Assembly (NCBI RefSeq): GCF_964204645.1
Contig: NC_134035.1
Span: forward strand, 9,518,451-9,582,450
Direction of reading: 5' to 3'
Source: Tubulanus polymorphus
Lineage: Eukaryota; Animalia; Nemertea
Length of the DNA stretch: 64,000 nt
Part shown: piece by piece, positions 1 through 17,400 of the stretch
How the letters are laid out: each line of letters begins with the position of its first letter
Position numbering within the stretch: the stretch's first letter is position 1
Notes under the pieces: generated by a model
What the model saw: the letters and a program-made list of their open reading frames with translations, nothing else
The model's database searches: none
Told to the model about the DNA's origin: nothing
Program-made: the position numbers and the translations under genes

Positions 1-76
1 AACAAAATAGTTTTTCGCACTACCATGGCAAACAGACGCGTAATGTGGTGATAGTGGGCTTTAGCAAGGTTTACTA

Positions 77-400
77 CATCCTCCCTCGGCAGGGATTCGA
101 ACCTGATGGCATCGCTAAACTCAGCCACGGCATGAACCCCTGCCACAGTAGACCGGGTGCGCAGGTATGCGCAGCTTTGCCACACGAAAACTTGCGGCAC
201 CAATCAGCTTGCTCGTTGTATAAGCGCCGAGGTAAATTTCACGGAAGAACTATAAATGGGAAATCCCGGGCTAAAATAAAATGGGATATCTGATTGGCTA
301 ATAATGACATCATCTAAGCTGCGCGTGTAGCTGCGCACTCGGTCTAGTGTGGCAGGTTTCGTACCGTGCCATCAGGTTCTAATCCCTGCCGGGGAGGATG
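77..400. mobile_element. Non-autonomous TIR element (Mutator-like MITE, CATCCTC... family)
   Basis: TIRs catcctccctcggcagggattcgaacctgatggca / tgccatcaggttctaatccctgccggggaggatg; perfect 9-bp TSD ggtttacta (68-76, 401-409). Confidence 0.9.
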
Positions 401-700
401 GGTTTACTAATGCGTTAGTTAATAATTTCTTCTAGACAATTCAGTTGAAATCAACTCAACTTTTCCAGTTAGTTTCAGTTTGATTATCAATGAAAAATCT
501 TCCAAACACCTAACTGAAATACCGCCTTATCTGGTGTTGTAGCATGTATGATAATATACCGGTGTGTTTGGATTCCTGGGCATAAAAATTCAATTAAAAG
601 TTGATGAAAGGATTTTAACAACCGACGTAAAACTGACCGTTACGCCATCTGGTGGTCTATGTCAATACGCTATTTAACTACTTTTTGTATTCGAAATGAT

Positions 701-930
701 CAGGGTTCTTACTGATCAGGGAATCCAAAATCAAACCCTGATATTTCCCTGACCCGATCAAAAATTCCCCGATTAGAAACCTTGGTGGGATTCTGTTTTT
801 TTTCTCAAGAAGTTCCTTGTGCCACACTCGACACCGGCGAAAACAAGAAACCAAATTTGTTGCATTTCCCTGATTTTCAGGAAAAGGGTAGGAATTCCTG
901 GATTTTTCCTGATCTGTAAAGGAAACCACG
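701..930. mobile_element. MITE with CAGGGTT termini, in Zalpha-gene intron
   Basis: cagggttcttactgatcagg ... cctgatctgtaaaggaaacc imperfect TIRs; internal ttccctga/ttccccga motifs also seen at ~38470-38510. Confidence 0.55.
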
Positions 931-1044
931 AATGTCTGACCCAATTCTTTGAATATTTGAAATGACCCAACTATGCGACGTCGACGAAAATTAGTAAAGA
1001 ACCGAACAGAAAAATAGAAAATGCCGGAGATGACTTGAACTTAC

Positions 1045-2271
1045 TTGGATAACGAGTTGTCGTCGCTTCAATTGGTTCAAAGTTCGATTGACCAAAGAAT
1101 GGTTCGTTTGACCGAGGGACGAGGCTATATAAGGAGTTTTATAAGGGCCTTTGCTTTTACCGAGGAATACCAAGATCTTTTCGCCCAAATCGCCGGTTCT
1201 GTCCTAGAAAATAATCACAAATCAGCACTCACTCATTGACCGCGAATAAAATAAAAACCGTCACACTGATAAATCATTGAAAATTAAAACCCGATTGAAC
1301 TTAGAACTGCTGTAAGAATTGCCCTAGTTTTAGTTTACAAACTGTCTACAGTTACGGGAGTCTATACTATATCTACGTACGCGTTAGTGTGAAAGAATAG
1401 GGTTTTTTTAAGGTAAGGTAGGGCTATAAATGAATTAAATTACATCAAGCCTGCAGTTCTATGCTCTGCGGCTCAGTGGTTAAAAAAGCACAGGAATAAC
1501 ACCAGATATTTTTCCCTTGGTTTCGAATCTAAGGCAAGTCAGAATTCTACTTCTGCATTGCGCATGCGCTAACCAGACTCCCGTAACTGTGGCTGTTGCA
1601 CTCCATTTACAGACTCCTGTAACCAAAGCCACGACCTTCCACATCTATCGAGCAATACGTGCGGATTCGAGCTCACTTTTATATAGGGCCTACCCGAGAT
1701 ATAACATATAGGCCTATGACATGAACACCTATTTTCGGATCAGTTTATCGCTATCAAAAGCAAAAAACCCCTTCTTCAGCACACCATGTCGATTAAAGCA
1801 ATATTTTGAATAATTTCGAACAACTTTAACTGGCTTCAAATTTTAAGGCACAGTTTACTTTCACTTTCGTTTTCAAATTGACTCATGATTTCCACTTTCC
1901 CTTTCATCATTTCTACGCTTTCATACCTTGCTTTGGTGAAATTTCGGTCCATTATTTCGATTGGCGTACTGCATCGAACTATTCTGAGAAGGAGGAAAAC
2001 CTGTAGCGTCACGGGAAGCGCTTTCACAACGCCGAAATTGTTGTTGTTGCTGTCCCTGATTCGTGAGACACCATATCGGAGGAGTATCTTGTATTTTCTG
2101 GCAAATATCTCGTCGTTTTAGTTCATAAAGCGATTGATTTATTGTTTTCTTATTGCACTTTACATGTCTGACGATGTCTTTTAACTCCCACGGTGTGTTA
2201 TTCGCCGACGAGAACAGTTCTAAGATCCGATTTTGGATTTCGTTGAACTGGTGCTCCGCAGCGGCAGCCAT
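1045..2271 (-). CDS. Zalpha-domain (Z-DNA/Z-RNA-binding) protein, 5' part: exon 2271-1927 (Zalpha) + exon 1203-1045 (second, Zbeta-like winged helix); remainder probably beyond window start
   Basis: Exon 1 encodes ...KKTINQSLYELKRRDICQKIQDTPPIWCL..., matching the ADAR1 Zalpha signature KKEINRVLY...TPPLW. Donor AAG|gtatga at 1927/1926 (phase 0) joins acceptor ctag|GAC at 1204/1203 in frame: DRTGDLGEKILVFLGKSKGPYKTPYIASSLGQTNHSLVNRTLNQLKRRQLVIQ, then donor CAA|gtaagt at 1045/1044. Confidence 0.85.
1320..1630. mobile_element. Element of similar architecture to 3404-3856, in Zalpha intron 1
   Basis: Inverted repeat acagttacgggagtct / agactcccgtaactgt, ggtaaggtaggg tract, tRNA-like gcggctcagtggtta...ggtttcgaatc, gcgcatgcg motif. 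Confidence 0.5.
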
Positions 2272-14430: not shown

Positions 14431-17400
14431 TTAAGCCACAGTAATGGCGTGTTTGAAGAAATCTTCACCTTCTCGGCCATCCATTACGCTAGTTATTGGA
14501 CGGAGGGGATTTTTGTGTTGAAGCAAATAATTCTAAAATGAAGAATCAAATACGAAATATAATATATATTCGACTTGGTTCCACAGTTGTGAGTTAGAGT
14601 CAATCCGAGTTAAGACTTTTAAGTTCATTTTCAATGAGTTAACTCAGAGTCAAATATTAGCACAGAACTGTGGAACTGGGGGTCCTGTAGAAGAAGAGCT
14701 AGATTTACCACGCGAAATCAGACTGGGTAATCCCAACGATTTGATCAACTATGAATCGTAGCGTCCCCGGGCAAGACACGTTTCCTCATCGCCTCTCCGC
14801 CTAGGCATAAATGGGGACCTGGGCTGATTAGATGACTCCCGAGTGCCTGGCAGCTGCTAGGATGTTACTTCTCCCCGGGGAGAGATGACTGATAAATGGT
14901 TAGAGTTTATAGGCTGGGGGTAGAAATGCTGGAAAGTTGAACGCTCTGAGCAGCTTCGCTGGATTTAGTGCTAGACATCATTATTACTGTTGATTGCTAT
15001 TATTATCATATCTTAGATACTTCGAAAAACTTACGTGGCCGTATGAAAGGGAATTTTTGCGTTCCGAGGTCGATGCACCTTTGCCGGTCCATACATACAA
15101 ATGGTCACCAGTATCAACGATGAACACATCCTGGAATAAGTGATAGTTTGAAAATAAAGAACACACTTCATACCGAATACGGTACGAGACTTAAAGGTAT
15201 AGATTCAAAGGATCAAAAACTTAATTACTTTTATATCAAGAATTAAAATCTTAAGTTCAAAGACAAGGTTTCGGATCTTTTTAAACATCACATATCAAAT
15301 ACATCTTTTCAATCTTTGTATATATCAGTTTTTAATCCGGTATTCTATTCTCCGTGTCTGAGTGTATGATTGCGATGCAAACTTACTGCTGAATCGAGCA
15401 TACTTTTCTTAATGTCGCCCTGAGCAACTTCGCTGAATTCAAGTTTTCCACTCGCATCTGACAATCTATAGACATACAAGCAATATACCAATAACAAGGA
15501 TGTTAAAAACTTTATAAATGTTACTGTTTAGTGATTTTTTGAATCGAGCTGGATCTTTACTTGAAGAGTCGTTTCACGTCTTTAGTGATTCCCGAATCGG
15601 TGTCGTCGTCGTTCGCGTCAGCTTCCGGGCACGTGACGGGAAGCATACTCAAAAACTGTTTCTGAAAAAAAAACCGCGGAACTTCGATGATTCAGAAATA
15701 TCAATACTACATTCAACCAAATGATATAGAAATACAGTAAACCTCGCCTTACTCCGACATAGCCAACTCTAGCGACTTATTATTAACTATGACAAATGAC
15801 AAATATCGAATTTCTAACGTATTTTGTATCCCTGTTTGCCTGAGTTTGGCAAGGTTTACAGTATATAGTTTGGAGGTTGAATAAAGGCACATACAACTTC
15901 TTCTTCCGTTGCGCCTTCCTCGTCAACAACTTCTATCTCCGCTCCGTGACGTTCACTTCGCATTTTGCTCGCGCAGGTTATCGCCTGCGAAAAGACGGAG
16001 AAACGATAATGGAGTCATCATCTGAACCGAATGCTATGATCAGAAATTACCAATTTAATGCTCTATTCTAACTTTACTGATAAGCCCTCAGGTTAAGTTC
16101 AATGAAAGAGAAAATCCGATAAATAAAACATCGGCATTACTTAAGTTTTGTGGAGTTTGCTGATTTTATGCAATTACCTTAAATTTTTCATCCTTGTTGG
16201 CATTTTTGCCGATCATCTGATACAGTTTTTTGCCGAAATCCAGGATGAAACAATCGTCCGAATTCAACGATTTCTGACAGAATGGGACCTAGAAAAGATG
16301 AGGAATTCTTTAAGTTGGACTCGTGCTCACAAGTTAGTGTATGTATTTGATCATCCCGATCGTATTTTGTTTTCTCCATGGATTTTTTCAATTATCCACC
16401 GAAGCAATTCACATTTCACCTTCCGCAATTGTTTATTTTTCACACAGTTAGTGGGTATGGAAAATTGGGCTATGACTGATATAGTCCTAATGAACTAACA
16501 TACCTCCTTTACAAGAACATTGTTTCGACCACCGACAATTTGTAGAAGTCTCGGCTCGTACTTTTCAGTTGTGACGTGCCTGAAACCCGAATCTGCGCCG
16601 CCTTTCAGTAATCTGATCGAAAAAAATAACAACGATATATTTCTACGTGACTCGCTCACGTTCGCATCACATTTTGATTCAACAAGGGTCTTACTCGATT
16701 GTGCCGAAATAGCTTTGGAATAGATCCGATTCGTGACCTTGAACCTCTCGATGCTGAATCGGTTTGTCGTCGAGGAAAGTATCGAGCTCGACAGTTTTAT
16801 AAGCGGCAGTGCCGTATTCATCCTTCCAAAAAGAAATTCACCAGCAATTTATGATAGATTAAATGTATAATGATATTGTTACAATATACGGCGCACACCA
16901 AGGATCATCTCTTCCACCTCCCTGTACATGTACTACTATGTAATATAGAGTATACATTACTGCTGGGCCTCCTAATAGACGAATTGACTGATTTGATATT
17001 TGTTTTGAATTCGATAGGATTTGTTTCTGAGCTTTCATAATTAAACAATGCGCTGATACGGATATTTCGATGCGTGCTGTCTACCTGCGTGCTATCTGCG
17101 CCGATCCAGAAATGTACGTCATACTCGAAGCCATCCTCTCCGGGCGGTTTGAATTTCTGAAATATCAATTATGACGGAGGTATTCTATTACACAGAATAT
17201 GTGATATTTACATTACCGGGGAGGGAAGGGGGAGGGGGGCTTTTTTATGTAACAATCCTCTATGTGCGCAAAATAGGGGTTTACTGCAACAGACGTTACT
17301 GAAACTGAAACTGAAACTGTTACGTTGAAAAAAATAACAACGTCTAAATTAATAGCCCGTTAAGCGGATTGAGTTTGTTATATAACAATGAACCGGCAAT

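What the first reader, a model, noticed from the sequence alone, without database searches (positions are those of the whole stretch)
1045..2271. Invertebrate gene opening with a canonical Zalpha domain plus a Zbeta-like domain: candidate Z-nucleic-acid sensor
Seen: the protein starts almost directly with a winged helix carrying K-K-x-I-N-x-x-L-Y and T-P-P-x-W. Established: in ADAR1 Zalpha the Z-DNA/Z-RNA contacts are K169, K170, N173, R174, Y177, P192, P193 and W195; all are kept here except R174->Q. After a Q/S-rich linker, a separate exon encodes a second winged helix (…SLVNRTLNQLKRRQLVIQ) with the key Tyr replaced by Asn, as Tyr is also lost in the non-binding ADAR1 Zbeta. Known Zalpha carriers are few (ADAR1, ZBP1, fish PKZ, poxvirus E3, cyprinid herpesvirus ORF112). 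An N-terminal Zalpha split from its partner by introns differs from the vertebrate ADAR1 layout, where both lie in one large exon. Inference: either a divergent ADAR1 or an undescribed invertebrate Zalpha innate-immune sensor; the effector domain lies left of the window.
Basis: partly seen in the sequence, partly recalled or inferred. Interest (0 to 1): 0.85.

Follow-up and report, generated by a model that had tools for sequence, protein, structure and literature searches.

The report
Ribbon-worm ADAR1 gene, 5' end
The stretch is the first two coding exons of the ordinary ADAR1 RNA-editing enzyme of the ribbon worm Tubulanus polymorphus, which like many invertebrate ADAR1s opens with a canonical Z-DNA/Z-RNA-binding domain; it is not a new kind of immune sensor.

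Summary
On the minus strand, window 2271..1927 is an exon that opens with a canonical Zalpha domain. It scores 35-36 bits on Pfam PF02295 (cut-off 21) and keeps 8 of the 9 ADAR1 contact residues (R174->Q). Window 1203..1045 encodes the helices of a second Z-type winged helix in which the key Tyr is Asn.

The effector lies left of the window, and it is the ADAR1 one. The gene has 12 GT-AG exons over about 10.5 kb. They encode three Z-type domains, a disordered linker of about 400 aa, one dsRBD and a complete adenosine deaminase.
- The exon translations tile exactly onto RefSeq XP_074660580.1 (Tubulanus polymorphus, 1254 aa, "uncharacterized protein").
- The deaminase scores 352 bits to human ADAR1 against 274 to ADAR2. 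It keeps the ADAR1-only second zinc site.
- A paralogue on contig C6 is the ADAR2.
- This is the genome's only Zalpha locus.

Of 139 proteins of 690 aa or more carrying Z-type domains (those scanned with Pfam were ADAR1-like), the count is 1 to 6 such domains, usually starting at the N-terminus. The layout here is therefore the norm.

Intron-less contigs confirm the splicing. They also show a form that skips exons 2+3, which removes domain Z2 in frame.

Verdict: an ordinary ADAR1 orthologue, a new member of a known kind, of low interest.

The parts
1927..2271 (-). Coding exon 1 of ADAR1: start codon (2271-2269), Zalpha domain Z1 (residues 12-71) and a Gln/Ser-rich tail. It ends in phase 0 at a GT donor (1926-1925).
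   Evidence: The ORF, with an in-frame TAA 16 codons upstream of the ATG. PF02295 at 35-36 bits. Maps to residues 1-115 of RefSeq XP_074660580.1. An intron-less contig of run X3 covers window 1927-2264.
2125..2151 (-). Recognition helix alpha3 of Z1: K41 K42 T I N45 Q46 S L Y49, equivalent to human ADAR1 K169 K170 N173 R174 Y177.
   Evidence: HMMER alignment to human ADAR1 (9b83) and other Zalpha chains. Column mapping. Model against 1qbj at rmsd 0.9-1.0 A.
2071..2085 (-). Beta-wing motif of Z1: T63 P64 P65 I W67, equivalent to human T191 P192 P193 W195.
   Evidence: W is invariant and the two Pro are kept in at least 90% of 62-63 aligned Z domains.
1204..1926 (-). Intron 1 (723 nt, GT..AG). 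It contains a dispersed repeat of about 300 bp (1330-1633) and a cluster resembling IRF/ISRE and AP-1 sites just after the donor: TGAGTCA at 1885-1879 and three tandem GAAANN units at 1874-1859.
   Evidence: Splice sites. Run X3 has little or no contig depth over the intron (0, 2.5 and 1.3 in the three bins wholly inside it), against 20-36 over exons 1 and 2. Repeat copies. The motif occurs twice in the window against 0.07 expected.
1045..1203 (-). Coding exon 2 (53 aa, phase 0 at both ends): helices alpha1-alpha3 and strand beta2 of the second Z-type domain Z2, with N-R kept and Tyr177->Asn. With exon 3 it forms a cassette that some transcripts skip.
   Evidence: Residues 116-168 of P0001. 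X3 contig 19 carries the whole exon spliced to exon 3. The whole domain scores 20.0 bits on PF02295. Model pLDDT 89.7, with Zalpha/Zbeta structures as top matches.
1..1044 (-). Most of intron 2 (1070 nt in all; it runs 26 nt past the left edge of the window). It holds a very high-copy repeat at about 32-429.
   Evidence: A joint that skips 1070 nt with GT..AG on the minus strand, in an X3 contig. Summed contig depth is 10^4-10^5 there, against about 40 elsewhere.

Best explanation
This is the 5' end of the single ADAR1 orthologue of the nemertean Tubulanus polymorphus (RefSeq XP_074660580.1 / LOC141913040, 1254 aa, unnamed there).

**Shown: the architecture**
- Z1 is a canonical Zalpha domain in exon 1.
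- Z2 has lost the key Tyr (Y->N) and spans exons 2+3.
- Z3 has Y->F and spans exons 4+5.
- A disordered Ser/RG-rich linker of about 400 aa follows, then one dsRBD (exons 5/6) and a deaminase with all catalytic and zinc ligands (exons 7-12).

**Inferred: how it works**
- The dsRBD and deaminase bind double-stranded RNA and convert adenosine to inosine.
- Z1 adds affinity for left-handed Z-RNA/Z-DNA segments and so directs the enzyme to Z-prone duplexes.
- As in other animals, the role would be to mark self dsRNA and to edit viral dsRNA.
- Z2, and perhaps Z3, are degenerate. They more likely act as spacers or protein- or B-form-binding modules, as vertebrate Zbeta does.

**Other points**
- Shown: transcripts exist with and without the exon 2+3 cassette, so the protein is made with three or two Z-type domains.
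- Inferred: Z2 and Z3 are each cut by a phase-0 intron at the same point (after ...LVIQ, before the PPxW wing). They resemble each other (31%) more than Z1 (19-20%). This suggests duplication of a two-exon unit.
For: **Gene model**
- All 12 exons have GT-AG borders. Their separate translations tile residues 1-1254 of P0001 without a gap.
- P0001 was found with exon 1 alone (E=1e-75). It is XP_074660580.1 on a contig of 13,976,313 bases, the length of contig C11.

**Domains**
- A_deamin 336 bits (residues 912-1247), dsrm 48 bits (773-838), z-alpha 71 bits.
- By domain: Z1 35.9, Z2 20.0 and Z3 33.3 bits.
- The exon-by-exon scans agree.

**ADAR1 type**
- The deaminase scores 352 bits to human ADAR1 against 274 to ADAR2.
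- The exon 11 segment scores 61 against 24 bits. It aligns C1111/C1112 and H1133 to human C1081/C1082 and H1103, where ADAR2 has Y-Q and K (PMC7550611).
- H1018 aligns to H988.
- The paralogue on C6 scores the other way: 214 bits to ADAR2 against 140 to ADAR1. The A_deamin loci on C2 and C3 are distant.
- PF02295 has a single locus in the whole genome.
- All listed near relatives with a source name, bar one moth protein that aligns over only 43% of the query, are lophotrochozoan, deuterostome and cnidarian ADAR1-type proteins. Most carry PF02295+PF00035+PF02137. Examples: Lineus 65%, Lingula 64%, shark ADAR1 53%.

**Expression and splicing**
- Contigs of run X3 lack introns exactly at the junctions ex2-ex3, ex4-ex5, ex5-ex6 and ex6-ex7.
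- One X3 contig joins ex1 directly to ex4.

**Fold**
- Z1 model pLDDT 93.7, 0.9-1.0 A to 1qbj.
- Z2 model pLDDT 89.7. Its best matches are PKZ, ORF112 and ADAR1 Zalpha and ADAR1 Zbeta.
Against: - No activity was measured. Z-binding, editing and any immune role are inferred from homology.
- None of the four runs is on record as RNA. I infer that X3 is RNA from its intron-less contigs.
- The ex1-ex4 joint has only 30 letters on the exon 1 side, one short of the tool's 31-letter bridging rule. The ex1-ex2 and ex3-ex4 joints were not among the rows shown. Contig depths cannot give isoform ratios.
- The X3 contig on exon 1 stops 7 nt short of the ATG, so the transcription start and the start codon rest on the ORF and on the RefSeq model.
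- No rooted tree of the deaminase family was built. Orthology rests on reciprocal scores, diagnostic residues and architecture.
- The two AF2 models used alignments made of Z domains, which biases them towards that fold.
Confidence: 0.93

Rival explanations
1. A new, non-ADAR invertebrate Z-nucleic-acid sensor: Zalpha domains fused to a kinase, RHIM, death-fold or nuclease effector.
For: Only the window itself, where the effector cannot be seen. Non-ADAR Zalpha carriers do exist in the databases, for example a helicase-dsrm-Zalpha protein.
Against: The downstream exons encode a dsRBD and a complete A_deamin domain and nothing else. Spliced contigs and the RefSeq model link them to the Z exons.
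Confidence: 0.01
2. Two genes wrongly merged: a small Zalpha-only protein (exons 1-3) upstream of a separate deaminase gene that lacks Zalpha.
For: The links from exon 1 to the next exons rest on 30-31 letters of contig overlap. The ex3-ex4 joint was not among the rows listed. The other nemertean orthologue (Lineus) has only one degenerate Z domain.
Against: - The ex1-ex4 joint falls exactly on the predicted donor and acceptor. Contig 18 then runs on into exon 5.
- All exons are in phase and there is no stop before exon 12.
- Z3 straddles exons 4 and 5, and exon 5 also holds the dsRBD.
- The same architecture occurs in dozens of other phyla's ADAR1s.
Confidence: 0.02
3. A catalytically dead or decaying ADAR1 copy (ADAD-like) that only binds nucleic acid.
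For: No activity was measured. Z2 and Z3 have lost the key Tyr.
Against: - Intact H936-A-E938, C993 (PCGD) and C1066 (SCSDK), and an intact second zinc site.
- 336 bits over the full Pfam model.
- No stop or frameshift.
- 60-65% identity to other lophotrochozoan ADAR1 deaminases.
- It is expressed.
Confidence: 0.03

Closest known systems
Invertebrate ADAR1 (ADAR1-like of Grice & Degnan 2015, PMC4323055; lophotrochozoan ADAR1 of Rosani et al. 2019, PMC6651903, which included the nemertean Notospermus)
   Same: N-terminal Zalpha, further Z-type domains, a single dsRBD and an ADAR1-type deaminase. Lingula and Antedon have 3 Z domains, Strigamia and Branchiostoma 4, Saccostrea 2. The first-domain signature K/R-K-N-Q-Y is shared with Antedon, Lingula, Sinanodonta and Saccostrea.
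   Different: Tyr->Asn in the second domain is rare (2 of 88 second domains). Z2 and Z3 are each split by an intron. Z2 is an optional two-exon cassette. None of this changes the kind.
Squid ADAR1 (sqADAR1, PMC10278661)
   Same: Zalpha, then a long Ser-rich disordered region, one dsRBM and an ADAR1-like deaminase.
   Different: Squid has a single Zalpha, and one exon encodes Zalpha, linker and dsRBM together. Here there are three Z-type domains spread over five exons.
Vertebrate ADAR1 p150 (human; PDB 1qbj, 1xmk, 9b83)
   Same: A canonical Zalpha followed by a Tyr-less Z domain. [quoted passage not shown] The shark orthologue's deaminase is 53% identical.
   Different: Vertebrates have three dsRBDs and two Z domains, with Zalpha after an N-terminal extension. 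Here there is one dsRBD and three Z domains, and Zalpha starts at residue 12. No p110-type promoter or start was shown here.
ZBP1, PKZ, poxvirus E3, CyHV-3 ORF112 (other Zalpha carriers)
   Same: The same Zalpha fold and contact residues in Z1.
   Different: They have other effectors or none. This gene has a deaminase, so it is not of their kind.

Membership tests
Zalpha domain (Pfam PF02295), domain Z1 | Sequence match above the curated Pfam threshold | tested here: met
   35.0-35.9 bits against a cut-off of 21. It is the only such locus in the genome.
Zalpha domain (Pfam PF02295), domain Z1 | Winged helix (alpha1-beta1-alpha2-alpha3-beta2-beta3) that superposes on solved Zalpha:Z-DNA complexes | tested here: met
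   AF2 model pLDDT 93.7. Foldseek best matches are 4kmf and 1qbj (rmsd 0.9-1.0 A, TM 0.88-0.90 by target) and ZBP1. Caveat: the alignment behind the model was made of Z domains.
Zalpha domain (Pfam PF02295), domain Z1 | Z-contact residues: the core triad N173/Y177/W195 plus K169, K170, R174, T191, P192, P193 | tested here: met
   Eight of nine are kept, with R174->Q. The same Q is found in the first domains of crinoid, brachiopod and bivalve ADAR1s.
Zalpha domain (Pfam PF02295), domain Z1 | Binds and stabilises Z-DNA/Z-RNA | not testable with these tools
   Needs a CD or EMSA assay with d(CG)6 or r(CG)6.
ADAR1 | C-terminal adenosine deaminase (A_deamin) with the catalytic Glu and three zinc ligands | tested here: met
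   336 bits over positions 1-329 of 329. H936, E938, C993 and C1066 are present.
ADAR1 | At least one dsRBD between the Z domains and the deaminase | tested here: met
   One dsrm, 47.9 bits, residues 773-838, split over exons 5 and 6.
ADAR1 | Deaminase closer to ADAR1 than to ADAR2, with a separate ADAR2 present in the genome | tested here: met
   352 against 274 bits. The C6 paralogue scores 214 to ADAR2 against 140 to ADAR1. No rooted tree was built.
ADAR1 | ADAR1-specific second zinc site (human H988, C1081, C1082, H1103; PMC7550611) | tested here: met
   H1018, C1111, C1112 and H1133 align to them. ADAR2 has Y, Q and K at the last three.
ADAR1 | Single-copy (one-to-one) orthologue in this genome | tested here: met
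   One PF02295 locus. There are four A_deamin loci, of which C6 is ADAR2-type and C2 and C3 are distant. The search is exon-wise, so a highly diverged copy could be missed.
ADAR1 | A-to-I editing of dsRNA | not testable with these tools
   Needs an enzyme assay or a matched RNA/DNA comparison.
Zbeta-type (non-Z-binding) Z domain, domain Z2 | Z-domain fold without Tyr177 | tested here: met
   PF02295 20.0 bits, just below the cut-off, and 51.5 bits with a Z-family profile built here. Model pLDDT 89.7, with matches that include ADAR1 Zbeta 1xmk. The signature has N-R kept, Y->N and PPxW kept.
Zbeta-type (non-Z-binding) Z domain, domain Z2 | Orthology to vertebrate Zbeta | tested here: inconclusive
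   58 of 88 second domains in the ADAR1-like proteins surveyed keep N-Y-W, so the loss of Tyr here looks lineage-specific. No domain tree was built.

The most novel reading that the evidence does not exclude
Nemertean ADAR1 may tune its Z-domain valency and its induction in ways that parallel vertebrate p150/p110 but arose independently. The optional exon 2+3 cassette would switch between forms with three and two Z domains. The cluster of IRF/ISRE-like and AP-1 sites at the start of intron 1 would make the gene IRF-inducible, or drive a Zalpha-less transcript, in an animal without interferon.
Probability: 0.12. Interest if true: 0.45.

Novelty: new member of a known kind. Interest (0 to 1): 0.15.

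Why it matters
It matters little beyond annotation. An "uncharacterized protein" of the Tubulanus polymorphus RefSeq set can be named ADAR1, and the number of Z-type domains can be raised from the two that Pfam detects in the whole protein to three. The result adds a palaeonemertean data point to an established picture. In that picture a Zalpha-bearing ADAR1 with one dsRBD is ancestral in animals, and the number and integrity of the Z domains drift between lineages. For example, the heteronemertean Lineus keeps only one degenerate Z domain. The optional Z2 cassette and the ISRE-like cluster in intron 1 are modest leads for work on ADAR1 regulation in interferon-less animals.

Tried and rejected
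- **Exon 2 alone against Pfam.** It gave only weak Rrf2/MarR winged-helix hits and no z-alpha hit. The domain is recognisable only with its wing from exon 3, taken from the database protein.
- **Exon 3 alone and the 391-aa linker.** Neither matched any Pfam family.
- **Search for RNA runs.** No listed run is on record as RNA. I used run X3 because its contigs lack introns. X2 and X4 cover introns and were not used as evidence for splicing.
- **Editing.** The A>G difference at L018 1467 is on the plus strand (T>C in the mRNA sense). It is shared by the S2 runs whose contigs cover introns (X2, X4), so it is a polymorphism, not editing.
- **An upstream coding exon.** None is visible. There is an in-frame TAA 16 codons before the ATG and no ORF of note for about 10 kb upstream. 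RNA contigs stop 7 nt short of the ATG, so the 5' end stays open.
- **The joined step.** Exons were searched one by one by reference. All full-length analyses used the database protein P0001, which the search with exon 1 returned and onto which the separate exon translations map exactly.
- **Tree.** I built no tree of the deaminase family. Only ADAR1-type hits were listed, so there was no proper ADAR2/ADAD/ADAT outgroup set.

Full report
**1. What is in the window**

The gene lies on the minus strand.
- An ORF starts at the ATG at window 2271 and runs to 1927, where a GT donor follows. An in-frame TAA lies 16 codons upstream of the ATG.
- The 115-aa product matches Pfam z-alpha (PF02295) at E=1.5e-8, 35 bits against a cut-off of 21, over residues 11-71. 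Cut to residues 1-90 it scores 35.9 bits.
- Against the sequences of solved structures it finds only Zalpha proteins: human ADAR1, yatapoxvirus 34L, vaccinia E3, ZBP1/DLM-1 and fish PKZ.
- In the alignment to human ADAR1, K41, K42, N45, Y49, T63, P64, P65 and W67 stand at K169, K170, N173, Y177, T191, P192, P193 and W195. Q46 stands at R174.
- An AlphaFold2 model built on 63 Z-domain sequences has pLDDT 93.7. It superposes on the human Zalpha:Z-DNA complex 1qbj at 0.9-1.0 A.
- After intron 1 (723 nt), exon 2 (window 1203..1045, AG/GT, 53 aa) encodes the helices of a second winged helix. It ends ...NRTLNQLKRRQLVIQ, with Asn at the Tyr177 position.

One addition: exon 2 stops before the beta-wing.

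**2. The rest of the gene**

The window is contig C11:9518451-9582450 of a 268-Mb genome. I fetched the 30 kb to its left and read it exon by exon.
- Exon 3 starts 26 nt beyond the window edge. It opens with the missing wing of domain 2 (…PPSWKI).
- Exon 4 holds the helices of a third Z-type domain, again ending …KLVIQ. Exon 5 opens with its wing (…PPLWKI).
- Exon 5 then runs through about 400 residues with no Pfam match. They are rich in Ser, with an RGRG stretch. The exon ends in the first half of a dsRBD.
- Exon 6 holds the second half of the dsRBD. Exons 7-12 hold an adenosine deaminase.
- All introns are GT..AG. The coding sequence is 3762 nt plus a stop, giving 1254 aa.
- A genome-wide six-frame scan finds PF02295 only here. 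It finds A_deamin at four loci, of which this is one.

**3. The database protein**

A HMMER search of 1.84 billion representatives with exon 1 alone returned a 1254-aa protein, P0001, at E=1e-75.
- It is RefSeq XP_074660580.1, "uncharacterized protein LOC141913040" of Tubulanus polymorphus (Nemertea). It sits on a contig of 13,976,313 bases, the length of C11.
- The twelve separately translated exons map onto residues 1-1254 in order and without mismatch. The model is thus independently the same as mine, and P0001 served as the reference for whole-protein analyses.
- Pfam on P0001 gives A_deamin 336 bits (912-1247), dsrm 47.9 bits (773-838, one copy) and z-alpha 70.9 bits.
- By domain the scores are Z1 35.9, Z2 20.0 (just under the cut-off) and Z3 33.3 bits.
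- The Z2 model (pLDDT 89.7) has as best structural matches PKZ Zalpha, CyHV-3 ORF112 Zalpha, ADAR1 Zalpha, ADAR1 Zbeta and the ZBP1 Z domains, at 1.3-1.7 A.

**4. Is it ADAR1?**

- The deaminase scores 352 bits to human ADAR1 and 274 to human ADAR2.
- The contrast is sharpest in exon 11, at 61 against 24 bits. There C1111, C1112 and H1133 align with human C1081, C1082 and H1103, where ADAR2 has Y, Q and K.
- H1018 aligns with H988.
- These four residues form the second zinc site that sets ADAR1 apart from ADAR2 (PMC7550611).
- The catalytic H936-A-E938, C993 and C1066 are intact.
- The strongest other A_deamin locus (C6) scores the opposite way, 214 bits to ADAR2 against 140 to ADAR1. It is the ADAR2 orthologue. 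The loci on C2 and C3 are distant from both.
- The nearest relatives of the deaminase are ADAR1-type proteins, most carrying PF02295+PF00035+PF02137. They come from Lineus (65%), Lingula (64%), Owenia, many molluscs, hemichordates, echinoderms, corals, amphioxus and a shark (53%).

**5. Is the layout unusual?**

No. Grice & Degnan defined ADAR1-like proteins as having any number of Z and dsRB domains plus the deaminase, and traced them back to sponges (PMC4323055). Rosani et al. catalogued them in 14 lophotrochozoan genomes, including a nemertean (PMC6651903). Squid ADAR1 has one Zalpha, a long Ser-rich region, one dsRBM and the deaminase (PMC10278661).

- Strigamia and Branchiostoma ADAR1 have four Pfam z-alpha stretches, Antedon and Lingula three, and Saccostrea two. 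Each has a single dsrm, and the first Z domain starts within the first dozen residues.
- A profile built from the three Tubulanus domains found 352 Z-type domains in the 192 proteins pooled from the two searches.
- Among the 139 of them that are 690 aa or longer, the number of Z-type domains per protein is 1 (51 proteins), 2 (56), 3 (23), 4 (7), 5 (1) or 6 (1). Those I scanned with Pfam were ADAR1-like, bar one helicase fusion.
- The first domain has the N-Y-W triad in 98 of the 139.
- Gln at the R174 position recurs in Antedon, Lingula, Sinanodonta and Saccostrea.
- Tyr->Phe recurs in second and third domains (10 of 88 and 11 of 32). Tyr->Asn is rare (2 of 88).

"Zbeta-like" is therefore a fair description of Z2 by analogy, but nothing shows orthology to vertebrate Zbeta.

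**6. Expression and splicing**

No run is on record as RNA. However, the contigs of run X3 lie on exons and lack the introns.
- Its joints skip 119, 326, 283 and 1070 nt with GT..AG borders on the minus strand. These fall exactly at my ex6/ex7, ex5/ex6, ex4/ex5 and ex2/ex3 borders.
- One X3 contig runs from exon 5 through all of exon 4 and then straight into the last 30 nt of exon 1. It skips exons 2 and 3 (438 nt, in frame), which removes exactly Z2 and its linker and would give an 1108-aa form.
- Another X3 contig carries exon 3 and exon 2 plus 31 further letters on the exon 1 side.
- Both forms therefore seem to exist. Their ratio cannot be read from contigs.

Limits:
- The ex1-ex4 joint has 30 letters on one side.
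- The ex1-ex2 and ex3-ex4 joints were not among the rows shown.
- The exon 1 contig stops 7 nt before the ATG.

**7. Mechanism**

Shown: the domain set and the intact catalytic and contact residues.

Inferred from the family: the enzyme binds dsRNA through the dsRBD and deaminase and converts A to I. Z1 recruits it to Z-prone segments. Z2 (no Tyr) probably does not bind Z-form nucleic acid, and Z3 (Phe) is uncertain.

Z2 and Z3 are cut by phase-0 introns at the same point. They are more alike (31%) than either is to Z1 (19-20%). This suggests duplication of a two-exon unit.

**8. Verdict**

This is an ordinary single-copy ADAR1 orthologue, already predicted but unnamed in RefSeq. It is a new member of a known kind and of low interest. 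Its small points of interest are the third Z domain, the optional Z2 cassette and an IRF/ISRE-like cluster in intron 1.

Noticed in passing
window 1859-1885 (minus strand, intron 1, 40-70 nt after the exon 1 donor): A perfect AP-1 site (TGAGTCA, 1885-1879) followed by three tandem GAAANN units (GAAAACGAAAGTGAAA, 1874-1859), which resemble an ISRE/IRF element on the gene's strand. The triple unit occurs twice in the window against 0.07 expected. It could be an intronic enhancer or an internal promoter of ADAR1.
   Followed up: partly
window 17301-17316 (+): The only other (GAAANN)x3 match in the window (GAAACTGAAACTGAAA). Its context was not examined.
   Followed up: no
window 1330-1633 (intron 1): A dispersed repeat of about 300 bp, with more than 40 copies on many contigs of the genome at 68-91% identity.
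   Followed up: partly
window ~32-429 (intron 2; L018 3583-3980): A very high-copy repeat. Summed contig depth is 10^4-10^5 against about 40 for single-copy sequence, and many contigs break at its edges. The same motif (…CCCTGGCAAGCGAGGATG…) recurs at window ~2300-2320 and ~2650-2670, upstream of the ATG.
   Followed up: no
P0082 (Lineus longissimus XP protein, 1199 aa): The heteronemertean ADAR1 orthologue (62% identical over dsRBD plus deaminase) has only one Z-type domain, and it is degenerate (N173->T, P193->V). It has no precomputed PF02295 hit. Zalpha integrity therefore varies within Nemertea.
   Followed up: partly
P0005 (1091 aa, database protein, not from this genome): A DEAD/ResIII helicase plus Helicase_C plus dsrm protein with two C-terminal z-alpha domains (77 bits). 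This is a non-ADAR Zalpha carrier that might be a helicase-type Z-RNA sensor. Its source organism was not looked up.
   Followed up: no
P0001 residues ~528-535; Lineus P0082 ~405-413: A short RGRG(I) motif is the only stretch of the ~400-aa disordered linker that the two nemertean ADAR1s visibly share. It may be an RGG/methylation or localisation signal.
   Followed up: no
G000:C6:22412835-22415754 (+); C2:31720583-31722689 (+); C3:10866562-10867742 (-): The other three A_deamin loci of the genome. C6 is the ADAR2 orthologue, with large exons. C2 and C3 are distant, possibly ADAD- or ADAT1-like, and the C2 and C3 matches contain stops that may be introns.
   Followed up: partly
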